Virus record (IMG/VR): IMGVR_UViG_3300042868_007959
Location: 62,001-126,000 of that record
Strand: one strand, 5' to 3'
DNA length: 64,000 nt
Every line of letters begins with the position of its first letter. Position 1 is the first letter of the stretch. Of the stretch, positions 13,626 to 38,192 are shown piece by piece. The notes beneath the pieces were generated by a model. The model was not told where the DNA came from. It saw only the letters and a list, made by a program, of their open reading frames with translations, and did not search any database. The position numbers and the translations under genes are program-made.

Positions 13626-13643
13626 GTATTTTAATTGTTTATG

Positions 13644-13717
13644 TGGTCCTTGTTGGAATCGAACCAACCACCTACTGATTATGAGTCAGTTGCTCTAACC
13701 GAATGAGCTAAAGGACC
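13644..13717 (-). tRNA. tRNA-Ile2/Met (CAT), Ile2-like body
   Basis: GGTCCTT/AAGGACC acceptor, CT-CAT-AA loop, TTCGATT T-loop; no CCA. Confidence 0.9.
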
Positions 13718-13878
13718 AATTAGCGGAGATTTCATCCCATCCATTGATCACCCAAGGACTCGTTTCTAATGTATTTGGCACTCCGCCATTGTAAGTTTTC
13801 TGTTGCTTACGCCCTCATTCGTGGACTTCCGACATCCCAATGAGTTTTACCGTCCTATCGGAGTCAGGTAACCGCTTG

Positions 13879-13970
13879 TAGTCAGGACAGGACTCGAACC
13901 TGTATGTACAGTTATACAGAACTGCACATCCCTGTATGGATATTTGCGTCTACCATTTCGCCACCTGACT
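13879..13970 (-). ncRNA. tRNA-scaffold element F (non-canonical anticodon arm)
   Basis: AGTCAGG/CCTGACT acceptor, Leu-type D arm, ACAGG-TTCGAGT-CCTGT T arm; 42-nt insert with two hairpins. Confidence 0.8.
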
Positions 13971-14080
13971 ATAAAAACACACTCTTCAGCTTTCTACTTC
14001 CAGCTCCGAGAAATTATATATAACTTAGCCCATCTCACCGCTGTATGGGAACTGAAGTTTATGTGTCTTAAGGTTGAGAG

Positions 14081-14157
14081 CCTCTGTGTTGTAATGTTAA
14101 TTCTACATTTACATTATTTATTACGTTTAATTCCTTTCTCAAGGGAACAACACAATA
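14081..14157 (-). repeat. Structured repeat copy 1 (GAGA-tetraloop three-way motif)
   Basis: Shares identical 12-nt and 25-nt blocks with 15604-15674. Confidence 0.75.
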
Positions 14158-14161
14158 ATTA

Positions 14162-14237
14162 TAGATAGGGTGGGATTCGAACCCACAATGAACAACCTTA
14201 AAAGGACTCGGCACCGTGCCTCATTACGCTCCTACCT
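14162..14237 (-). ncRNA. tRNA-scaffold element G
   Basis: AGGTAGG/CCTATCT acceptor, GTGGG-TTCGAAT-CCCAC T arm; no canonical anticodon arm. Confidence 0.7.
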
Positions 14238-14243
14238 ACACTG

Positions 14244-14320
14244 AACTACCCATAGGACTCGAACCTACAACCCTTCGGCCTTAGTGACCAATGTGCAAAC
14301 CAATTTACACCATAAGTAGT
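14244..14320 (-). tRNA. tRNA with CTA anticodon (amber-suppressor-like; non-canonical A33)
   Basis: ACTACTT/GGGTAGT acceptor; TTGGT-CA CTA AG-GCCGA anticodon arm; canonical T arm. Confidence 0.65.
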
Positions 14321-14416
14321 TAATCAAGAAAACATATCAGAAATTACTGGTACCAAATCTCACTGCGATATATGATACATCTTCTTGTTAGGATTGGTTA
14401 ATTACTCCTATCTTTG

Positions 14417-14488
14417 TACTCCCACGGAGAATCGAACTCCGATTTTCAGGATGAAAACCTGATGTCCTAACCGTTAGACGATGGGAGC
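14417..14488 (-). tRNA. tRNA-Glu(TTC)
   Basis: Full cloverleaf; TCAGG-TT TTC AT-CCTGA. Confidence 0.95.
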
Positions 14489-14707
14489 AAATTGTGACAA
14501 CCTTTGGGTTCGATTGTCACTTTTACGTGAAAGGAGTGATCAGACCCTCTAACATCACGAGTGTAAGTTTTTCACATTAAACTATCTCTACAAAACGTCA
14601 GTTTTTATCGCCCTTAAACTGAATAAACGGTTTGACACTTTGTATCCCCTTTTTTAAGTGCGTGATACATCTTCTCTCAAACTGAACTCTACTGAGAACA
14701 CTCCCTG

Positions 14708-14779
14708 CGGTCTATGAGAGAATCGAACTCTCGGCACATCCGTGACAGGGATGTATGTTAGCCACTACACTAATAAACC
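14708..14779 (-). tRNA. tRNA-Asp(GTC)
   Basis: CATCC-CT GTC AC-GGATG; G73. Confidence 0.95.
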
Positions 14780-15004
14780 AAGTTTCCCCACTCTGAGATT
14801 ACAAGTGAGTAGTCGTATCGGTTTTTTTTCTATTTGAAAAACCTGATGGGCATCCCCGTTGAAAAAGTCAGCTCTATACGTCAGCAGTGCAGAACCTCGC
14901 TACTGTTATTCTGAATCGATTGCCTTAGGGAGGCGTTTTTTAACCCTATCCATTGTTAAATGAGTCTTGGATAAAAGACTACTGAGTATCTCTTACTCAT
15001 TATG

Positions 15005-15161
15005 TAGTTGGGGTAGGACTCGAACCTACATAAACACTTTGAAATTTACCTACGCACCGTGAGGTAGTGTTCTTCATCATTTGCATTGCCTAACCATTGA
15101 TCGATTTTACGTTTCGGCTGCCGTGCGTGTCAATAAGCGTCTACCATTTCGCCACCCAACC
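15005..15161 (-). ncRNA. tRNA-scaffold element E (107-nt structured insert)
   Basis: GGTTGGG/CCCAACT acceptor, GCGAAATGGTAGACGC D arm, GTAGG-TTCGAGT-CCTAC T arm. Confidence 0.8.
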
Positions 15162-15209
15162 ATACTACATCTCCTTTCGATTCTATAAGGAATCTACTCC
15201 GTTCTGTTG

Positions 15210-15283
15210 TACACCCGCCAGGATTCGAACCTGGGACCTATTCATTAGAAGTGAATTGCTCTATCCAGCTGAGCTACGGGTGC
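15210..15283 (-). tRNA. tRNA-Arg(TCT)
   Basis: ATTCA-CT TCT AA-TGAAT. Confidence 0.95.
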
Positions 15284-15502
15284 AAATAAAAGATGATAAA
15301 TGGATTTATCAGGAATCTGGCTATAACCATAAACACTTCCTATAATTTCTATACTATTGTCATTAGCGTATATGAGCTTCACACACCATTAGAGAGTCGG
15401 GTTGTTACATCAATACAATTAAGATCGAATACCTTTCCTTAGTGTGTACCTTTGCGTCACGTCTCTCCACGCTTACCATTCTACGCTTTGTATCATCTTT
15501 TG

Positions 15503-15586
15503 TACTCGAATCGGGACTTGAACCCGAACGGGCAATTGCCCACAAGATTTTAAGTCTGGCGTGTCTACCGATTCCACCATCCGAGC
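15503..15586 (-). tRNA. tRNA-Leu(TAA)
   Basis: CCAGA-CT TAA AA-TCTTG; long variable arm. Confidence 0.95.
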
Positions 15587-15603
15587 TTATGAGGGTGAGA
15601 AGT

Positions 15604-15674
15604 CCTCTGTGTTGTGAGTTTTAGAACCAAAGGAACCGCACCCATCCATCCTTTCTCAAGGGAACAACACAATA
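15604..15674 (-). repeat. Structured repeat copy 2
   Basis: See copy 1 at 14081-14157. Confidence 0.75.
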
Positions 15675-15685
15675 TTCTTTATAAC

Positions 15686-15703
15686 CAATATGTCAATGAA
15701 CTT
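15686..15703 (-). promoter_or_regulatory. boxA-like antitermination element
   Basis: AAGTTCATTGACATATTG directly after the promoter, before tRNA cluster 1. Confidence 0.65.
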
Positions 15704-26551: not shown

Positions 26552-26603
26552 TATAACAAATGATAAACAACATTAAAACGATTGTTTATCATCGGACGTT
26601 ATA
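26552..26603. repeat. attC-like inverted-repeat element 1
   Basis: TATAAC-AA-ATGATAAACAA...TTGTTTATCAT-CGGAC-GTTATA; identical to 28580-28631. Confidence 0.7.
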
Positions 26604-27197: not shown

Positions 27198-27297
27198 AAT
27201 TTTTCTTTTTTTTTTACAAATATACTAATTATTTTTCATTTAATCAAGTTTTATCTTAAAATCACCGTACTGGTTATAACCAATACTACTTTTGTTC

Positions 27298-27678: not shown

Positions 27679-27886
27679 TGTTTTAGTATTTCTTTAATAA
27701 CATCTTCCCATTGATTGGTTTCGGTTATATGTTTAATTTTGTTTTCTGAAAAAGAAGATACTTGTCTATGACCTTCTTTATCAGTAATAATAATCTCCAT
27801 TTTAGATTCCATAATCTATTTTTTTTTACAAATATACTAATTATTTCCCAATTAGTCAAGTTTTATCTTAAAATCACCGTACTGGT

Positions 27887-27978
27887 TATAACAACGTGTA
27901 TATTCAAGTTTGCATCAGCATTTGTGCATAATTCAAATTTAATCAAAGCAAACCTGAAATATACACGCATCCGTTATA
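27887..27978. repeat. attC-like inverted-repeat element 2
   Basis: TATAAC-AA-CGTGTATATT...AATATACACG-CATCC-GTTATA. Confidence 0.68.
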
Positions 27979-28579: not shown

Positions 28580-28631
28580 TATAACAAATGATAAACAACA
28601 TTAAAACGATTGTTTATCATCGGACGTTATA
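28580..28631. repeat. attC-like inverted-repeat element 3
   Basis: Exact copy of element 1. Confidence 0.7.
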
Positions 28632-29083: not shown

Positions 29084-29149
29084 AATAAACGTTTTATAAC
29101 AACAAATATAGATATTAATTTCTATATAAACAAATTTTTTTAAAAATAG

Positions 29150-29224
29150 TACCAAAGGTGAGATTCGAACTCACAAACCTTTGTTTCTAAGACAAAGAGG
29201 TATACCGATTCCCGTCACTTTGGC
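29150..29224 (-). tRNA. tRNA-Leu(TAG), short variable loop
   Basis: TTTGT-CT TAG AA-ACAAA; 5-nt variable region. Confidence 0.88.
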
Positions 29225-29230
29225 ATTTTG

Positions 29231-29303
29231 AGCAGGTAGAGAGAATCGAACTCTCGTCCTCTGATTGGAAGTCAGACATAATAAGCCACTATACGATACC
29301 TGC
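29231..29303 (-). tRNA. tRNA-Gly(TCC)
   Basis: TCTGA-CT TCC AA-TCAGA; U73. Confidence 0.95.
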
Positions 29304-29473
29304 ATTAAGATTATTTTCTCTTAATCTTTTTTTTTAATTTAATAAATTTTATTAATCTTATTAAATTAATAGAATTTTTTCTAGACTCGATAATATTAAA
29401 ATTATCTTTCGATGATCTACCAGAACCCGTCATTACCTCTCTCATACTTATTTATTTTACTTTTTATTATTTG

Positions 29474-29547
29474 TGGATACATCTCGGCTTCGAACCGAGG
29501 ACTCCTGAGTGCAAATCAGGTGTGATAGCCAGCTTCACCAATGACCC
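29474..29547 (-). tRNA. tRNA-Ala(TGC), one-nt acceptor bulge
   Basis: CCTGA-TT TGC AC-TCAGG; G3:U70. Confidence 0.85.
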
Positions 29548-29550
29548 AAA

Positions 29551-29628
29551 TGGTTGCGGGACTGGGACTCGAACCCAGAACTTCGGCTTATGAGACCGAC
29601 GAGATAACCAATTTCTACATATCCCGCA
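29551..29628 (-). tRNA. tRNA-Met(CAT), initiator-like, CCA encoded
   Basis: TGCGGGA/TCCCGCA-A-CCA; TCGGT-CT CAT AA-GCCGA. Confidence 0.92.
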
Positions 29629-29661
29629 ATTTTTAATTACACCGAATTCGGTATAATTGAG

Positions 29662-29736
29662 TTCCCCCGACAGGATTCGAACCTGTGGCCCGTACATTAA
29701 AAGTGTAATGCTCTAAACCAACTGAGCTACGAGGGA
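29662..29736 (-). tRNA. tRNA-Lys(TTT)
   Basis: TTACA-CT TTT AA-TGTAC. Confidence 0.93.
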
Positions 29737-29742
29737 TTGTTG

Positions 29743-29814
29743 AGGTTTCGCTCAGATTCGAACTGAGGACACTTGATTACAAATCAAGAGTTTTACCGAC
29801 TAAACTACAAAACC
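29743..29814 (-). tRNA. tRNA-Thr(TGT)
   Basis: CTTGA-TT TGT AA-TCAAG. Confidence 0.93.
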
Positions 29815-29820
29815 TAATTG

Positions 29821-29894
29821 TCACCCGTATGGGATTTGAACCCATGATCTTTTCCGTGAAAGGGAAACGACTTAAACCGCTTGTCCAACGGGCG
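29821..29894 (-). tRNA. tRNA-Glu(TTC)
   Basis: TTTCC-CT TTC AC-GGAAA. Confidence 0.93.
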
Positions 29895-29902
29895 ATATTT
29901 AG

Positions 29903-29975
29903 TAGTCTCTGTAGGGTTCGAACCTACGACAACTTGCATGTAAAACAAGTGCTCTACCAACTGAGCTAAGAGACT
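29903..29975 (-). tRNA. tRNA-Val(TAC)
   Basis: CTTGT-TT TAC AT-GCAAG. Confidence 0.95.
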
Positions 29976-29976
29976 G

Positions 29977-30052
29977 TGGCGGTCCATGACGGTTACGATC
30001 CGTCTACTCTACCGTGACAGGGTAGGATGATAAGCCATTTCACCAATAGACC
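29977..30052 (-). tRNA. tRNA-Asp(GTC), atypical T-loop, CCA encoded
   Basis: CTACC-CT GTC AC-GGTAG; T-loop ATCGTAA. Confidence 0.88.
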
Positions 30053-30056
30053 ATTT

Positions 30057-30202
30057 AAATGATAATCAGGATTAGATTATATACGTGCTCTACCAACTGA
30101 GCTACCGCCGCCCCGAAGGACAACGGACAGGATTCGAACCTGCGACACCGAGCTTAAAAGGCTAATGTAATTGTTGCTGAAACAATCCTTTTATTATCAT
30201 TT
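30057..30202 (-). ncRNA. Y-RNA-like (YrlA-like) RNA with circularly permuted tRNA-Lys module
   Basis: Terminal stem AAATGATAAT/ATTATCATTT; order: CT-TTT-AA hairpin, T arm, acceptor CCGTTGTCC-TTCG-GGGCGGCGG, D arm GCTCAGTTGGTAGAGC. Confidence 0.78.
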
Positions 30203-30203
30203 G

Positions 30204-30289
30204 AGGAAGAGGTAGGATTCGAACCTACGGTACCTTTCAGTACGCTAGTTTTCAAGACTAGTACAATAAACCAACTCTGTCACTCTTCC
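30204..30289 (-). tRNA. tRNA-Ser(TGA)
   Basis: CTAGT-CT TGA AA-ACTAG; long variable arm. Confidence 0.95.
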
Positions 30290-30298
30290 AATTTTTAC

Positions 30299-30315
30299 CA
30301 ATACGTCAAAGAACT
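30299..30315 (-). promoter_or_regulatory. boxA-like element
   Basis: AGTTCTTTGACGTATTG between the terminator and first tRNA. Confidence 0.7.
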
Positions 30316-30321
30316 AAAAAC

Positions 30322-30350
30322 AAAAAACCCTAAGTTCTCACTTAGGGTTT
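30322..30350 (-). terminator. Attenuator terminator 1
   Basis: AAACCCTAAG-TGAGAA-CTTAGGGTTT-TTT upstream of the tRNA-Ser(TGA) operon. Confidence 0.8.
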
Positions 30351-30379
30351 CCATTATATAGTATTTAAATTTTTAAATG

Positions 30380-30478
30380 TTATCTATTACAATATACCCT
30401 AAGATCTGGTTGCAGCGAATCCGCTCCCTCCATTTTCGTCTTAACGACCTCTAATCTGTATGTCATTGTATTTTTCAT
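30380..30478 (-). CDS. Putative leader peptide 1 (32 aa) MKNTMTYRLEVVKTKMEGADSLQPDLRVYCNR
   Basis: Manual translation; lies between promoter and terminator; contains antiterminator copy CTTAGGGT at 30396-30403. Confidence 0.6.
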   Translation of the reverse strand: MKNTMTYRLEVVKTKMEGADSLQPDLRVYCNR

Positions 30479-30509
30479 TGAAATTTTTACCTTTTTAATT
30501 AAATATACA

Positions 30510-30541
30510 TAAAGTTACGAAAGTTTCTTCAAAAAGTCAAA
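30510..30541 (-). promoter_or_regulatory. Bacteroidota-type promoter
   Basis: TTTGAC...TAACTTTA. Confidence 0.65.
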
Positions 30542-30578
30542 TAATTTTTAATTTTTTTTAAAATTTATTTTATTTAAG

Positions 30579-30652
30579 AGGTCAGAGAGGGATTCGAACC
30601 CCCGAATAATGGATTTGCAGTCCACCCCTTTAAACCACTCAGGCATCTGACC
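30579..30652 (-). tRNA. tRNA-Cys(GCA)
   Basis: GTGGA-CT GCA AA-TCCAT; U73. Confidence 0.95.
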
Positions 30653-30721
30653 ATTAGTTCACTAAACTATAATTTGCTCGATAAACTATATCTGTTTATT
30701 GTAGCAAAAATAAGTTTATTG

Positions 30722-30794
30722 TACACTCTGAGAGATTCGAACTCCCATCTTATAGTCCGTAGCCATATGTTCTGATCCGTTGAACTAAGAGTGT
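30722..30794 (-). tRNA. tRNA-Arg(ACG)
   Basis: TATGG-CT ACG GA-CTATA. Confidence 0.93.
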
Positions 30795-30796
30795 AT

Positions 30797-30871
30797 TGGT
30801 AGGGATGGGTGGAGTCGAACCACCGAGACAACTGTATAAGAGTTGCATGTTCACCGTTACATCACATCCCC
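30797..30871 (-). tRNA. tRNA-Ile(TAT), CCA encoded
   Basis: CAACT-CT TAT AC-AGTTG; A73-CCA. Confidence 0.88.
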
Positions 30872-30878
30872 ATTTTTG

Positions 30879-30966
30879 CGGAAAGAATAGGATTCGAACC
30901 TATGGTACCCTTACGAGTACAACACCTTAGCAGGGTGCCTCAATAAACCAACTCTGACATCTTTCC
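30879..30966 (-). tRNA. tRNA-Ser(GCT)
   Basis: GCACC-CT GCT AA-GGTGT; long variable arm; G73. Confidence 0.95.
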
Positions 30967-30971
30967 ATTTG

Positions 30972-31045
30972 GGTGTATGACGGGAATTGAACCCGTGACC
31001 TTTTGATTCACAATCAAACACTCTAACCAACTGAGCTACATACAC
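30972..31045 (-). tRNA. tRNA-His(GTG), no encoded G-1
   Basis: TTTGA-TT GTG AA-TCAAA; C73; base at -1 is T. Confidence 0.92.
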
Positions 31046-31047
31046 AG

Positions 31048-31118
31048 TTGTCTCCCAAGGATTCGAACCTCGATTCAGTGGTCCAAAACCACTTGTCCTG
31101 CCTTTAGACGAGGAGACA
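31048..31118 (-). tRNA. tRNA-Gln(TTG)
   Basis: AGTGG-TT TTG GA-CCACT. Confidence 0.93.
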
Positions 31119-31181
31119 ATTTAAAATTATTCACTACCCAAATATCGAATTTTTTACTACTTTTGGGAAGTTAATAATTAG

Positions 31182-31256
31182 TCTGGGTAGCGAGACTCGA
31201 ACTCACATTATGTCCACATCCCAAATGTGGCGGCTTACCAATTAGCCAATACCCAG
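31182..31256 (-). tRNA. tRNA-Pro(TGG)
   Basis: CCACA-TT TGG GA-TGTGG. Confidence 0.93.
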
Positions 31257-31263
31257 TTAAAAG

Positions 31264-31337
31264 TGGTGATGGGTGGAATCGAACCACCGACAACCTAGAT
31301 CTTCAATCTAGTGCTCTACCAACTGAGCTACATCACC
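31264..31337 (-). tRNA. tRNA-Phe(GAA)
   Basis: CTAGA-TT GAA GA-TCTAG. Confidence 0.95.
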
Positions 31338-31342
31338 ATTTG

Positions 31343-31415
31343 CACATCTCCAAGGATTCGAACCCTGATCAAACGATTTGGAGTCGTTTATGCTAAACCA
31401 TTACACCAGAGATGT
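31343..31415 (-). tRNA. tRNA-Trp(CCA)
   Basis: AACGA-CT CCA AA-TCGTT; G73. Confidence 0.95.
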
Positions 31416-31419
31416 GTAT

Positions 31420-31498
31420 AAATGTTCAGGAAGACTTTTTGTTTTCAAATTTCCGATCTTGATTTTTTTATTTTGCTGAAATCTTCCTTTTAACATTT
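31420..31498 (-). ncRNA. Minimal Y-RNA-like stem (no tRNA module)
   Basis: AAATGTT-AAAAGGAAGA-TTTCAGCAA...GTCTTCC-TG-AACATTT; same architecture as the 30057-30202 terminal stem. Confidence 0.65.
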
Positions 31499-31499
31499 G

Positions 31500-31582
31500 T
31501 GAGGGTAGTAGGATTCGAACCTACTCAGTCATAGACAACAGATTTACAGTCTGCCCCAACTCTCCAACTTTGGCGTACCCCC
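31500..31582 (-). tRNA. tRNA-Tyr(GTA)
   Basis: GCAGA-CT GTA AA-TCTGT; long variable arm. Confidence 0.95.
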
Positions 31583-31598
31583 ATTATTAATTTAATCA

Positions 31599-32138
31599 CT
31601 AAACATTTATTAAACCCGCATGTATTTCTGAATGACAATTAGAACACACTAAAATACATTTATCTACTTCATATTTTAATTTTTCGAAGGATAAACTTTT
31701 ACCTGATATTGTAAAATCTTTACTATTAGGATTTAAATGGTGGAATTCTAACGCATTAAAACATTTGTTATATCCACAAATTTGACACTTACCACCTTTA
31801 TATTCTACTAATCTAATTTTCACTCTCTTTCTCCATAAAATAACAGATTCAGAAGATGTCATTGTTTTAATTCTATCTTTAGTTTTAATATATTTTTTTA
31901 AAGTATCAAAAGAACGTTTAGTTATTTTAGATACTTTTTTTATTGAACCTAGTTCATCATATAATTTTTGATATAATTCAATGTCCTCTTTAGTAGTTTT
32001 TTGATTATTATCACCTAAACCATTCATTTTACAATGATAAGAAACTGTAGACATTGCACACCCTAAAATCTTAGTTATCTCTTTATACGTTTTACCTTCT
32101 TTTCTTAATTCTAAAATTTTTTTCGAATACCTTTCCAT
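31599..32138 (-). CDS. HNH homing endonuclease with N-terminal HTH
   Basis: KTYKEITKILGCAMSTVSYH; GGKCQICGY...LEFHHLNP...KCILVCSNCHSEIH. Confidence 0.9.
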   Translation of the reverse strand: MERYSKKILELRKEGKTYKEITKILGCAMSTVSYHCKMNGLGDNNQKTTKEDIELYQKLYDELGSIKKVSKITKRSFDTLKKYIKTKDRIKTMTSSESVILWRKRVKIRLVEYKGGKCQICGYNKCFNALEFHHLNPNSKDFTISGKSLSFEKLKYEVDKCILVCSNCHSEIHAGLINV

Positions 32139-32215
32139 AAGATTAACATTTTTAATTAATAAATATGGTATAATACTAATAATTTAATTTTAAAAAATCA
32201 ATAGGTAAAAAATTG

Positions 32216-32302
32216 CTGACGGGGTGGGATTCGAACCCACGGTGGAGAAATTCTCGTCGGATTAACAGTCCGATGCGTTCGGCCTACTACGCGAACCCGT
32301 CA
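32216..32302 (-). tRNA. tRNA-Asn(GTT) with long variable arm
   Basis: TCGGA-CT GTT AA-TCCGA; 16-nt variable arm with GAGA/TCTC stem; G73. Confidence 0.88.
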
Positions 32303-32315
32303 TTTACTTTCATAA

Positions 32316-32333
32316 CAATATGTCAAAGAACTT
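32316..32333 (-). promoter_or_regulatory. boxA-like element
   Basis: AAGTTCTTTGACATATTG. Confidence 0.7.
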
Positions 32334-32341
32334 TTGTTCTG

Positions 32342-32417
32342 TCGGTATGGTAGGGATCGAACCTACGAATCTTCTCGATATCAGCGAGATGCCTTAAACC
32401 AACTTGGCCACATACCG
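32342..32417 (-). tRNA. tRNA-Ile(GAT)
   Basis: TCTCG-CT GAT AT-CGAGA. Confidence 0.95.
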
Positions 32418-32426
32418 TAATAAATT

Positions 32427-32458
32427 AAAAAACCCCAACTCATTTCTGAATTGGGGTT
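32427..32458 (-). terminator. Attenuator terminator 2
   Basis: AACCCCAATTCA-GAAA-TGAGTTGGGGTT-TTTT. Confidence 0.82.
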
Positions 32459-32484
32459 CCACTTTGGTTTTATTTAATATCTAC

Positions 32485-32571
32485 TTAAAATTTATCCATA
32501 ATATACCCCAATCCGCCGCTATACGGTTGACACCATTGACTAAAATTAATATGTATATTATTTGTTTTCAT
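32485..32571 (-). CDS. Putative leader peptide 2 (28 aa) MKTNNIHINFSQWCQPYSGGLGYIMDKF
   Basis: Manual translation; contains antiterminator copy ATTGGGGT at 32505-32512. Confidence 0.6.
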   Translation of the reverse strand: MKTNNIHINFSQWCQPYSGGLGYIMDKF

Positions 32572-32596
32572 TTTTACTGTTATAATTAAATATATA

Positions 32597-32628
32597 CAAA
32601 TATAGGAAAGTTTCATTTAAAAGTCAAA
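32597..32628 (-). promoter_or_regulatory. Bacteroidota-type promoter
   Basis: TTTGAC...TATATTTG. Confidence 0.72.
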
Positions 32629-32768
32629 TATATTTTAAAATTTTTTTTTATTGGTAATATGGTACGTATTTTGTTAAGGTTATTTTCTTAATAACTAACA
32701 CCGTAAAAATATAAAACCCCCTTACACTAATAAGGGGGTTTATTTTTAATAACCAACAAAGTTTATTA

Positions 32769-32939
32769 CTACTTAACTTCGTTTGAAGTTGCTTCTACTG
32801 AAGTACTATCACTAGTAGTTACATTAGAAGTTGCTTCTGAAGTTGCTTCTGTACTTGCGTTTTCAGATGCTTCTGTTGAGTTACCTCCGCAAGACACTAA
32901 CAATGACATTACGGTTAATACTAAAAAAATTTTTTTCAT
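32769..32939 (-). CDS. 56-aa Ser/Thr-rich lipoprotein
   Basis: MKKIFLVLTVMSLLVSC-GGNSTEASENASTEATSEATS...; lipobox; followed by terminator ~32714-32742. Confidence 0.8.
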   Translation of the reverse strand: MKKIFLVLTVMSLLVSCGGNSTEASENASTEATSEATSNVTTSDSTSVEATSNEVK

Positions 32940-33090
32940 TTTAAAAAATTTAATTTAATTGTTATTAAGGCTTTTCACCCATCGGAGATTATAAGTATCT
33001 CTAACTTCTTTTATGTTACAAATTTAACATAAATATATTAAATGTCAAAATATTATAACACTATTGTTAAATATTTTAACATATTTTAGG

Positions 33091-37623: not shown

Positions 37624-37794
37624 AATCTTTTTATCTATAAAGTAAAATTAATAAAAAAATCCGAATCTGCCAAATTTTTTTATATAAATATTTGTTAAAA
37701 ATAAAAAAGTCCCGAATTAACGGGACTTTAAAGGGCCGATAGGATCACTATCAACTTCCACCACTTCGTTTTTAAGGAACAAAGAAACCTAATG

Positions 37795-38192
37795 TGGAGA
37801 TGGAGGGAGTCGAACCCTCGTCCAATCAAATTGCCATTAAAAATTCATTCACAAGCTTAGTTCATTTTTCTTAATGAACAAAATATTTGGTTTTATTTAT
37901 AACATGGTTACCAACAACCCTGTTTCGATAATTGTTTAGAGAGTTTTACCGTCAACTCTATTTTTTACACCTTTCTGTTTCTAGGTAAGTGTGACCCACC
38001 GATTAAACTAATTCCATTAATTCAATCTCTTCAACCACCGCTGAGCGAGTGATAGAAGTTGGGATACTCATCATATCCTCTGTGTTGTATGCGTTTGCAT
38101 TTATATTTTGATAGGTGTTTAAGGGTTTCCATCTAACCCTGCTTGCATCATTTCAAACTCAACCTTTGACTGTCAAATCCAAAACCATCCCC
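37795..38192 (-). ncRNA. ssrA: tmRNA
   Basis: 5' GGGGATGGTTTTGGATTTGAC; 3' GAGGGTTCGACTCCCTCCATCTCCA; G3:U70; resume context ATAAAT-GCA; tag ORF 38003-38098; no encoded CCA. Confidence 0.93.

What the first reader, a model, noticed from the sequence alone, without database searches (positions are those of the whole stretch)
30322..32628. Two paralogous leader-peptide attenuators gating the tRNA operons
Both tRNA blocks have the same layout: host-type promoter, short ORF (32 aa at 30380-30478; 28 aa at 32485-32571), strong intrinsic terminator, then tRNAs with a boxA. In each leader, the last codons hold an 8-nt copy of the terminator 3' strand (CTTAGGGT; ATTGGGGT) followed by the same ATATT. 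It can pair with the terminator 5' strand (ACCCTAAG; ACCCCAAT) as an antiterminator, and the two loci covary. Each leader uses 16 different amino acids rather than a run of one. Inference, by analogy with trp/his attenuation: when the host tRNA pool is cut or depleted for almost any codon, the ribosome stalls, the antiterminator forms and phage tRNAs switch on. This would be a general translation-stress sensor controlling tRNA supply, which I have not seen described.
Basis: partly seen in the sequence, partly recalled or inferred. Interest (0 to 1): 0.85.

Follow-up and report, generated by a model that had tools for sequence, protein, structure and literature searches.

The report
Codon-matched attenuators of phage tRNA operons
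Two tRNA operons of this large Bacteroidota phage are each preceded by a short leader gene and a terminator/antiterminator switch, the leader is written in the codons read by the tRNAs that follow it, and the same layout recurs in more than a hundred other phage contigs, so it most likely lets a phage make its tRNAs only when decoding of those codons is slow.

Summary
On the minus strand, both loci have a Bacteroidota-type promoter, a short ORF (32 and 28 codons), an 8-10 nt copy of the terminator's 3' strand inside the last codons, a strong intrinsic terminator and a boxA before the tRNAs.

These look like ribosome-mediated attenuators, but not generic stress sensors. Each leader uses the codons read by the tRNAs of its own operon. 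In leader B, 15 consecutive codons match block B. In leader A, 15 of 21 match block A.

The layout recurs at 118 places in about 114 IMG/VR contigs, and 116 have the short ORF. Across 36 leader families with complete blocks, 65% of leader codons are read by the block that follows, against 41% when blocks are permuted among loci. The match:
- holds only in the reading frame
- reaches the isoacceptor level
- peaks 5-13 codons before the antiterminator strand
- stops where a stalled ribosome would begin to cover that strand

The antiterminator covaries with the terminator across families (z about 15). The boxA is that of host rRNA operons. I found no Rfam family and no paper describing this.

The mechanism and its direction are inferred. 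There are no expression data.

The parts
30510..30541 (-). Promoter A, Bacteroidota type: -33 TTTG (30541-30538), 20-nt spacer, -7 TAACTTTA (30517-30510)
   Evidence: Read from the sequence. The 25-nt pattern is shared only with locus B. A similar promoter lies upstream of 36 of 52 leader families, against 15% of random windows.
30380..30478 (-). Leader ORF A, 32 codons plus TAA: MKNTMTYRLEVVKTKMEGADSLQPDLRVYCNR
   Evidence: The same peptide occurs in L003/L004, and a variant in L190.
30413..30475 (-). Sensing window of leader A (codons 2-22). 15 of 21 codons are read under strict wobble by block A tRNAs, or 17 of 21 if Val-UAC also reads GTC/GTT.
   Evidence: background 0.40, P=0.0035; the antiterminator stays intact with the ribosome A-site at codons 1-22 only.
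30396..30403 (-). Region 2 of A: CTTAGGGT, the antiterminator 5' strand, in codons 26-28
30353..30395 (-). AT-rich spacer of A holding the stop codon. It forms a hairpin that extends the antiterminator helix.
   Evidence: nascent RNA -14.5 kcal/mol, z -2.9
30316..30352 (-). Intrinsic terminator A: 13-bp stem, GAGA loop, U-tract. 5' strand ACCCTAAG 30348-30341.
30299..30314 (-). boxA of block A, GTTCTTTGACGTATTG
   Evidence: The identical motif lies in 16S-23S spacers of Bacteroidota rRNA operons.
29149..30289 (-). tRNA block A: Ser-UGA, Asp, Val-UAC, Glu, Thr-UGU, Lys, Met, Ala-UGC, Gly-UCC, Leu-UAG
32597..32628 (-). Promoter B: -33 TTTG (32628-32625), 20-nt spacer, -7 TATATTTG (32604-32597)
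32485..32571 (-). Leader ORF B, 28 codons plus TAA: MKTNNIHINFSQWCQPYSGGLGYIMDKF
32518..32562 (-). Matched codon run of leader B (codons 4-18). All 15 are read by block B tRNAs.
   Evidence: 15 of 17 codons 2-18, P=1e-5; run of 15, P=1.6e-7; antiterminator intact up to codon 16-18.
32505..32514 (-). Region 2 of B: GGATTGGGGT, the antiterminator 5' strand
32424..32460 (-). Intrinsic terminator B: 14-bp stem, GAAA loop, U-tract. 5' strand ACCCCAATTC 32457-32448.
32316..32331 (-). boxA of block B, GTTCTTTGACATATTG, after the first tRNA
30578..32417 (-). tRNA block B: Ile-GAU, Asn-GUU, an HNH endonuclease gene (31599-32138), then Tyr, Trp, Phe, Pro-UGG, Gln, His, Ser-GCU, Ile-UAU, Arg-ACG, Cys

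Best explanation
Each locus is a ribosome-mediated transcription attenuator that sets how much of a phage tRNA operon is transcribed.

Proposed sequence of events:
1. A host-type promoter starts a transcript whose first about 30 codons are a leader ORF.
2. The middle of that ORF is written in the codons read by the tRNAs encoded downstream.
3. If those codons are decoded slowly, the ribosome lags or stalls in the sensing window. Region 2, in the last codons, stays bare and pairs with the 5' strand of the terminator, extended by the spacer hairpin. The terminator cannot form.
4. RNA polymerase then runs on into boxA, where host Nus factors presumably make it processive, and into the tRNA genes.
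5. If decoding is fast, the ribosome reaches the end of the ORF and covers region 2 and the spacer. The terminator forms and the operon stays off.

The net effect is negative feedback of each tRNA set on its own synthesis. The signal read is total (host plus phage) decoding capacity.

Shown here: the anatomy, the alternative pairing and its covariation, and the codon-to-tRNA match with its frame and position dependence. Inferred: that the ORF is translated, the direction of control, the role of Nus factors, and the physiological trigger.
For: Recurrence
- 118 places in about 114 viral contigs have a hairpin terminator directly before boxA and tRNAs.
- 116 of them have a 22-49-codon ORF ending 24-43 nt before the terminator start. 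The second residue is K in 38 of 52 families, and the 15 nt before the ATG are 61% A.

Alternative pairing
- The best complement to the terminator 5' arm scores 18.6, against 12.6+-0.3 for dinucleotide shuffles (z 20) and 13.1+-0.4 when arms are permuted among the 52 families (z 14.7). It ends a median 11.5 nt before the stop codon.
- The pairing is in the minimum-energy fold of the nascent RNA in 94% of families. Mean energy is -16.7 kcal/mol, against -14.4 for the terminator hairpin alone.
- Window A: -14.5 against -19.0 kcal/mol once the 3' arm is present. Window B: -20.3 against -22.3.

Codon match
- 64.9% of leader codons are read by the tRNAs of the block that follows, against 41.5+-2.2% when blocks are permuted (0 of 5000 permutations reach it).
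- 88.9% of the block's anticodons are represented in the leader, against 59.9% when permuted.
- Leader 64% against 37% for long-ORF codons of the same locus, higher in 34 of 34 loci and in 25 of 25 sequence clusters.
- Only frame 0 shows the effect: 0.646 against 0.403 for other loci's blocks. Frames +1 and +2 and the antisense triplets sit at background.
- Ser/Leu/Arg codons fall in the codon box of the block's isoacceptor in 67 of 86 cases, against 46% in long ORFs (p=2e-9).

Position
- The match peaks at 0.7-0.83 from -13 to -5 codons before region 2. It falls to background from -2 onward and in the ORF tail.
- In the window, a footprint model keeps the antiterminator only for A-site codons 1-22 (A) and 1-16/18 (B). 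The matched runs end exactly there.

Within single genomes
- Window: leader A has 17 codons read by block A and 9 by block B; leader B has 7 and 19.
- L144: 17/29 own block against 3/29 other. L185: 19/26 against 2/26.

Other
- G-ending wobble codons of U34 families make up 39% in leaders against 19% in long ORFs.
- The boxA equals the rRNA-operon boxA of Bacteroidota.
Against: - There are no transcript, 3'-end or ribosome-profiling data. Translation of the ORFs and the direction of control are inferred.
- In 75% of families the antiterminator also forms in the fold of the whole untranslated leader, so there is no general 1:2 anti-antiterminator. The switch can turn off only if ribosomes load efficiently.
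- In B, region 2 lies 18 nt before the stop codon, at the trailing edge of a terminating ribosome. The simple mask then leaves 9 of 10 pairs intact, so blocking would have to be steric or happen while the ribosome passes through.
- Two loci (L021, L066) have an extra promoter between terminator and boxA, so read-through is not the only route to the tRNAs there.
- The third tRNA block of this phage (15586-13643) has a promoter and boxA but no leader.
- Among closely related leaders, gain or loss of an anticodon in the block does not predict more or fewer cognate codons (34 up, 36 down, 66 equal). My block definitions are noisy.
- Polymerase arriving from block B, already modified at boxA, might ignore terminator A.
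- How tightly transcription and translation are coupled in Bacteroidota is not established here.
Confidence: 0.75

Rival explanations
1. General translation-stress sensor. The leader is a generic stretch of mixed codons. Any slowdown of translation, at almost any codon, gives read-through, and the codon content has no specific meaning.
For: The structural switch would respond to any stall inside the sensing window. Leaders use 11-19 different amino acids. The concept has a precedent in the Anabaena tRNA array, which is induced by translation inhibitors (PMC8421152).
Against: Codon content is specific to the operon that follows, at codon and isoacceptor level and in frame only. Two leaders in one genome have nearly disjoint codon sets that mirror their own blocks.
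Confidence: 0.1
2. The leader senses aminoacylation or amino-acid supply, as classical biosynthetic attenuators do, rather than tRNA abundance. It would couple phage tRNA synthesis to starvation for those amino acids.
For: A ribosome reads ternary-complex supply, so charged-tRNA level and tRNA abundance cannot be separated by sequence analysis. The geometry is the same as in trp/his leaders.
Against: The match is at isoacceptor level (Ser TCN against AGY, Arg 19 of 19), which an amino-acid sensor does not need. Making more tRNA does not relieve amino-acid starvation.
Confidence: 0.05
3. The unit is an independent small-protein or small-RNA gene with its own promoter and terminator that merely sits in front of tRNA arrays. 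The tRNAs would be made by constitutive leak-through or from other promoters. The terminator would act as an insulator, and the upstream complement would be unrelated to regulation.
For: Promoter plus about 150 nt plus a strong terminator is also the layout of an sRNA gene. L021 and L066 have a second promoter after the terminator. The full-length fold favours the terminator. Leader A is called as an unnamed gene in three database entries.
Against: Peptides are hypervariable apart from the MK(N/T) start, yet track the downstream tRNA set. The complement covaries with the terminator across families and sits at a fixed distance from the stop codon. In most loci 0-24 nt separate the U-tract from boxA and the tRNA, which leaves no room for a promoter. 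The match stops exactly where a ribosome would start to mask region 2.
Confidence: 0.05
4. The switch is set without the ribosome, for example by a protein, a small RNA or a tRNA that binds the leader RNA directly (T-box-like). The triplets would then be read as RNA.
For: Triplets complementary to anticodons could in principle pair with tRNAs directly. The untranslated leader often adopts the antiterminator fold by itself.
Against: The match exists in one frame only, bounded by an ATG and a stop codon, and involves up to 15 contiguous triplets. No T-box or other Rfam family matches.
Confidence: 0.03

Closest known systems
Leader-peptide transcription attenuators of amino-acid biosynthetic operons (trp, his, leu, pheA; multi-amino-acid leaders of thr and ilvGMEDA/ilvBN) - from established knowledge
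   Same: - A short ORF lies right after the promoter.
- An intrinsic terminator has its 5' strand able to pair with an upstream strand instead.
- The regulatory codons are placed so that a stalled ribosome leaves the antiterminator strand free.
- The distances from the stop codon to the terminator are similar.
   Different: - The regulated genes are tRNAs, not enzymes.
- Instead of a run of one to three kinds of codon, the leader lists up to about 15 different codons, roughly one or more for each tRNA of the operon.
- The antiterminator strand lies inside the ORF, upstream of the stop codon.
- Most members have no conserved 1:2 anti-antiterminator.
- The device is found in phages, not in the bacterial genomes scanned.
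T-box riboswitch (Rfam RF00230) - from established knowledge
   Same: It links tRNA status to a terminator/antiterminator choice, and it uses a codon-like specifier.
   Different: A T-box binds one uncharged tRNA directly, without a ribosome, and controls aminoacyl-tRNA synthetase and amino-acid genes. Here there is no T-box sequence or fold (no Rfam hit), and the triplets are an in-frame ORF.
rrn / lambda-nut boxA-Nus processive antitermination (PMC3177189, PMC4807359 listed)
   Same: The 16-17 nt motif after the terminator is identical to the boxA found in 16S-23S spacers of Bacteroidota rRNA operons. It precedes untranslated RNA genes.
   Different: boxA lies downstream of the regulated terminator, so it cannot be what decides read-through there. 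It is an added module. Nus factor binding was not tested.
Anabaena tRNA L-array (trn operon) induced by translational stress (PMC8421152)
   Same: A block of accessory tRNA genes is kept off and switched on when translation is impaired.
   Different: [quoted passage not shown] There is no leader ORF or terminator switch, and no codon-level matching to the array's tRNAs.
Antibiotic-sensing leader peptides of resistance genes (erm, cat and ABC-F type attenuators) - from established knowledge
   Same: Ribosome stalling on a short leader ORF remodels downstream RNA and switches on a gene that relieves the stall.
   Different: Those sense a drug-bound ribosome at a specific peptide motif. Here the peptide sequence is hypervariable, and it is the codon set that is conserved relative to the cargo.

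Membership tests
Ribosome-mediated (leader-peptide) transcription attenuator | Short ORF immediately downstream of a promoter and upstream of the regulated genes | tested here: met
   ORFs 30478-30380 and 32571-32485 lie behind -33/-7 promoters. 116 of 118 related places have such an ORF, and 36 of 52 families have a promoter against 15% of controls.
Ribosome-mediated (leader-peptide) transcription attenuator | Intrinsic terminator between the leader ORF and the regulated genes | tested here: met
   Mean hairpin energy is -14.4 kcal/mol, followed by a U-tract.
Ribosome-mediated (leader-peptide) transcription attenuator | Mutually exclusive antiterminator that uses the terminator 5' strand and is conserved by covariation | tested here: met
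   z 20 against shuffles and z 14.7 against terminator arms permuted among 52 families. Present in the minimum-energy fold of the nascent RNA in 94% of families. Window folds.
Ribosome-mediated (leader-peptide) transcription attenuator | Regulatory codons cognate to the operon's product, placed where a stall frees the antiterminator strand | tested here: met
   The codons are those read by the operon's own tRNAs, in frame, at isoacceptor level, peaking at -13 to -5 codons and ending at the footprint boundary. The form is unusual: many different codons rather than a run of one.
Ribosome-mediated (leader-peptide) transcription attenuator | Anti-antiterminator (1:2) or pause hairpin that gives termination when the leader is untranslated | tested here: not met
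   The full-length folds of A and B show a helix between codons 3-6 and the bases after region 2. However, in 75% of families, and in A and B when the 3' arm is absent, the 2:3 pairing persists in the untranslated fold.
Ribosome-mediated (leader-peptide) transcription attenuator | Translation-dependent change of read-through shown by experiment | not testable with these tools
   No cultured phage with this layout was found in GenBank phage records, and no transcriptome was available.
T-box riboswitch | Stem I with specifier loop and the conserved T-box sequence in the antiterminator bulge | tested here: not met
   No Rfam match in the leaders at E<=1 in the window, nor at gathering score in 12 related loci.
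rrn-type boxA / Nus antitermination site | boxA sequence as found in the host's rRNA operons, located in the transcript before untranslated RNA genes | tested here: met
   GTTCTTTGACRTATTGG is found in 16S-23S spacers (after tRNA-Ala, before 23S) of Chitinophaga, Niabella, Mucilaginibacter and Bacteroidales genomes. There are three copies in the window, each at the head of a tRNA block.
rrn-type boxA / Nus antitermination site | Binding of NusB-NusE and resistance of polymerase to termination | not testable with these tools
   This needs biochemistry or genetics.
Any curated RNA family (Rfam 15) | Covariance-model match in the leader region | tested here: not met
   Only tRNA, tmRNA and unrelated hits were found.

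The most novel reading that the evidence does not exclude
This is a widespread, undescribed class of phage regulatory element. tRNA operons would carry a 'barcode' leader peptide listing the codons of their own tRNAs, so that the ribosome measures the decoding capacity for each of them. Through a terminator/antiterminator switch followed by a borrowed rRNA boxA, the operon would be transcribed only on demand. That demand could be early in infection, on a host with a mismatched tRNA pool, or when host tRNAs are cut or depleted.
Probability: 0.7. Interest if true: 0.92.

Novelty: new variant of a known kind. Interest (0 to 1): 0.88.

Why it matters
Why phages carry tRNA genes, and when they use them, is a long-standing question. 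Proposed answers include codon-usage compensation, replacement of degraded host tRNAs and escape from anticodon nucleases.

A cis-element that reads decoding speed for exactly the tRNAs it controls would be direct evidence that these tRNAs are deployed on demand and kept in balance. It would also make the question testable with simple reporters.

If the reading is right, it would further:
- be the first case known to me of leader-peptide attenuation controlling tRNA genes, with one leader integrating up to about 15 different codons
- imply functional transcription-translation coupling in Bacteroidota
- explain hundreds of unannotated short ORFs in phage tRNA arrays
- show phages reusing the host rRNA boxA
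- offer natural, modular sensors of individual tRNA pools

Tried and rejected
- Rfam scans of the window (E<=1) and of 12 related loci gave nothing in the leaders.
- The GenBank phage collection has no close relative of the region and no match to three abundant leader families or to a terminator-boxA junction. Bacteroides phage DAC15, the best cultured hit to the tRNA/HNH part, has a plain promoter before its tRNAs, with no leader, terminator or boxA.
- Bacterial genomes: the same T-tract-plus-boxA pattern gives 26 hits in 185,579 species. They are rRNA spacers or chance matches, and none has a leader or tRNA array. I therefore dropped the idea that this is a host device copied by phages.
- A MAFFT alignment of 51 switch regions misaligned region 2 because spacer lengths vary. 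I did not build a covariance model or count pairs on it. Instead I relied on permutation tests that re-optimise the pairing for every null.
- A conserved 1:2 anti-antiterminator was suggested by the full-length folds of A and B, but it is not general.
- Fine-scale co-evolution of leader codons with gain or loss of tRNAs among related loci gave no signal (34 up, 36 down, 66 equal). The anecdote that L176 lacks both tRNA-Glu and Glu codons should not be over-read, because that locus is cut short.
- The idea that the codon match is genome-wide codon bias is rejected by the same-locus ORF control, the ORF-tail control and the frame controls.
- Seven literature searches found no description of leader-peptide control of tRNA operons.


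Full report
**What is there.**

The window is part of IMG/VR contig IMGVR_UViG_3300042868_007959, which is 253,879 bp long. It has about 29% G+C and nearly all genes are on the minus strand. It carries 28 tRNA genes and a tmRNA.

Locus A:
- Promoter TTTG-N20-TAACTTTA (30541-30510).
- A 32-codon ORF (30478-30380).
- CTTAGGGT in codons 26-28 (30403-30396).
- A 13-bp terminator (30352-30323) whose 5' strand is ACCCTAAG.
- GTTCTTTGACGTATTG (30314-30299).
- tRNA-Ser, starting at 30289.

Locus B:
- Promoter TTTG-N20-TATATTTG (32628-32597).
- A 28-codon ORF (32571-32485).
- (GG)ATTGGGGT (32514-32505).
- A 14-bp terminator (32460-32429) with 5' strand ACCCCAAT(TC).
- tRNA-Ile, then GTTCTTTGACATATTG (32331-32316) and the remaining tRNAs.

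The two 8-mers differ at two positions, and both differences are compensated in the terminator. The shared promoter pattern occurs only at these two places in the window.

Of the 16 terminator-like hairpins in the window, only these two have a strong upstream complement to their 5' arm (scores 24 and 20; the rest are 15 or less).

**Folding.**

Before the 3' strand of the terminator exists, the predicted fold of the nascent RNA is the antiterminator. Region 2 pairs with the terminator 5' strand and closes a hairpin formed by the AT-rich spacer. The energies are -14.5 kcal/mol for A (z -2.9) and -20.3 kcal/mol for B (z -3.9).

Once the 3' strand is present, the terminator configuration is only slightly better: -19.0 and -22.3 kcal/mol. 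The ATATT shared after the 8-mer belongs to the spacer helix that extends the antiterminator.

**It is a family.**

The motif after the terminator is the boxA of Bacteroidota rRNA operons. An exact-pattern scan of one genome for each of 185,579 bacterial and archaeal species gave 26 hits. They were mostly in 16S-23S spacers just before 23S rRNA in Chitinophaga, Niabella, Mucilaginibacter and Bacteroidales. None had a leader or a tRNA array.

Among the fetched loci:
- 118 places, in about 114 contigs, have a hairpin terminator directly before boxA and tRNAs.
- 116 of these have a 22-49-codon ORF ending 24-43 nt before the terminator start.
- Most ORFs start MK(N/T/Q) behind an A-rich leader and a -33/-7 promoter.
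- Each has a 6-11 nt complement of the terminator 5' arm in its last codons.

Across 52 leader families (70% peptide identity or less), that complement scores 18.6. Dinucleotide shuffles give 12.6+-0.3, and permuting terminator arms among families gives 13.1+-0.4 (z 14.7). This is covariation across families. The complement ends a median 11.5 nt before the stop codon.

The 2:3 pairing is in the minimum-energy fold of the nascent RNA in 94% of families.

**The key result: the leaders spell out their operons.**

In leader B, codons 4-18 are AAT AAT ATA CAT ATT AAT TTT AGT CAA TGG TGT CAA CCG TAT AGC. Every one is read by a tRNA of block B (Ile-GAU, Asn, Tyr, Trp, Phe, Pro, Gln, His, Ser-GCU, Ile-UAU, Cys). 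Only Arg-ACG is not represented.

In leader A, codons 10-22 are GAG GTC GTT AAG ACG AAA ATG GAG GGA GCG GAT TCG CTG. They correspond to block A (Glu, Val, Lys, Thr, Met, Gly, Ala, Asp, Ser-UGA, Leu-UAG).

Serine is TCG in A and AGT/AGC in B, matching the different tRNA-Ser genes downstream.

Against the codon usage of the window's own long ORFs:
- Leader B has 15 of 17 matching codons, against an expected 35% (P=1e-5).
- Leader A has 15 of 21 under strict wobble, against an expected 40% (P=0.0035).

Across 36 dereplicated families with complete blocks:
- 64.9% of the codons between codon 2 and region 2 are read by the tRNAs of the block that follows. Permuting blocks among loci gives 41.5+-2.2% (0 of 5000 permutations reach the observed value).
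- 88.9% of the block's anticodons are represented in the leader, against 59.9% when permuted.

Controls:
- Codons of long ORFs from the same locus match at 37%, and the leader is higher in 34 of 34 loci.
- The leader is higher in 25 of 25 clusters at a 40% identity cut-off.
- The ORF tail, from region 2 to the stop codon, shows no enrichment (35% against 35%).
- Only frame 0 shows the effect. Frames +1 and +2 and the antisense triplets are at background.
- For Ser, Leu and Arg, the codon box used is that of the block's isoacceptor in 67 of 86 cases, against 46% in long ORFs (p=2e-9).
- In contigs with two leaders, each matches its own block: L144 17/29 against 3/29, and L185 19/26 against 2/26.

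Examples:
- MKNLFHTTTSSSTSTSSCDEDTR... precedes Ser, Ser, Thr, Cys, His, Thr, Ser, Glu, Asp.
- MKTLRQTSQLSLHTPSLSRP... precedes His, Ser, Ser, Leu, Arg, Gln, Pro, Thr, Leu, Leu, Ser, Arg, Leu.

**Position fits the mechanism.**

When leaders are aligned on the start of region 2, the own-block match is 0.7-0.83 from -13 to -5 codons. It falls to background (0.32-0.41) from -2 onward.

I also modelled a ribosome footprint of -18 to +10 nt around the A-site. In that model the antiterminator survives when the A-site is at codons 1-22 in A and 1-16 (partly to 18) in B. It is lost beyond those points, and the matched runs end exactly there.

A ribosome at the stop codon covers region 2 in A. It would do so in most families, because region 2 ends a median 11.5 nt before the stop codon.

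In B, region 2 lies at the trailing edge of such a ribosome. The simple mask does not block it there. This is a weak point of the model.

**Most likely mechanism (inferred).**

- Slow decoding of the operon's own codons leaves region 2 free. The antiterminator forms and polymerase reads through into boxA and the tRNAs.
- Fast decoding brings the ribosome over region 2 and the spacer. The terminator forms.
- The result is negative feedback of each tRNA set on its own synthesis, reading total (host plus phage) decoding capacity.
- In U34 families, G-ending wobble codons are enriched in leaders: 39% against 19% in long ORFs, and 58% against 19% in leader A. This may tune sensitivity, or it may only serve RNA structure.
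- In 75% of families the untranslated leader also adopts the antiterminator fold. The default without ribosomes would therefore be 'on', unlike the trp leader.

**Caveats.**

- There are no expression data.
- Two loci have an extra promoter after the terminator.
- The third tRNA block of this phage has a promoter and boxA but no leader.
- There is no detectable fine-scale co-evolution of leader and block among close relatives.
- Polymerase already modified at the boxA of block B might ignore terminator A.
- The survey was tied to an exact boxA, and the scans were capped.

**Comparison with what is known.**

The device works like a classical leader-peptide attenuator. It meets that family's structural criteria except a conserved 1:2 helix. 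It differs in three ways:
- its cargo is tRNA genes
- its leader carries many different codons, roughly one set per tRNA
- it is confined to phages

It is not a T-box, and no Rfam family matches.

The closest functional precedent I found is the Anabaena tRNA array induced by translational stress. That array is controlled at its promoter (PMC8421152).

Seven full-text searches found no description of leader-peptide control of tRNA operons. No GenBank phage record carries these leaders.

**Verdict.**

- Observation: confirmed.
It is an attenuator, but the sensor is specific to the operon's own tRNAs rather than to any codon.
- Novelty: a new variant of a known kind, and widespread in uncultivated Bacteroidota phages.

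Noticed in passing
window 30053-30202 (minus strand), between tRNA-Ser and tRNA-Asp of block A: A tRNA-like element whose 3' half (T-arm and acceptor 3' strand) comes before its 5' half (acceptor 5' strand and D-arm), as in a circularly permuted tRNA or the tRNA-like domain of a Y RNA. Rfam YrlA scores 33 bits, below the gathering score of 69. ARAGORN finds no tRNA there, even when introns are allowed.
   Followed up: partly
window 32215-32302 (minus strand): tRNA-Asn(GUU) is 88 nt long with a long variable arm, which is class II architecture. This is unusual for tRNA-Asn. Leader B contains three AAT codons.
   Followed up: partly
window 13643-15701 (minus strand): A third tRNA block (Leu-UAA, Arg-UCU, Asp, Glu, an odd 93-nt tRNA with a 4-nt anticodon call, Met) has a promoter and a one-mismatch boxA (15701-15686) but no leader ORF or terminator. 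Its tRNAs are separated by long spacers of 35-39% G+C. These contain further tRNA-like pieces and a repeated element (ATTGTGTTGTTCCCTTGAGAAAGGA...ACAACACAGAGG, near 15672 and 14157).
   Followed up: no
window 31599-32138 (minus strand): An HNH homing-endonuclease gene is inserted inside tRNA block B (PHROG HNH families, E=1e-28). It is the only part of the region with DNA similarity to Lak megaphages and other phages.
   Followed up: partly
window 37794-38192 (minus strand): A phage-encoded tmRNA with tag peptide ANAYNTEDMMSIPTSITRSAVVEEIELMELV lies about 5 kb upstream of the tRNA arrays. It is another investment of this phage in translation rescue.
   Followed up: no
L003 12472-12594 and L004 6167-6289, compared with window 30549-30680: Two contigs about 98% identical to the window carry leader A and block A. 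Directly upstream of promoter A they have the end of a protein gene instead of tRNA-Cys and block B. Both contigs end about 130 nt further on. Block B with its leader may therefore be an indel between close relatives, or an assembly break at the repeated promoter.
   Followed up: partly
window 27204-27280 / 27815-27892 and 26552-26603 / 28580-28631: Intergenic direct repeats: 78 nt at 94% identity and 52 nt at 100% identity. They coincide with promoter-like TTGACT-N17-TATATT sites, so they are probably repeated promoter modules.
   Followed up: no
L157, tRNA block after the leader MKQHSIYNLQ...: One related phage array contains a tRNA with anticodon UUA, an ochre-suppressor type. This hints at stop-codon reassignment in some members of this phage group.
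   Followed up: no
window 32714-32741 and 32773-32940 (minus strand): A bidirectional terminator sits just upstream of promoter B. It follows a small ORF with a lipoprotein-like signal (MKKIFLVLTVMSLLVSCGG...) and a Ser/Thr/Glu-rich tail.
   Followed up: no
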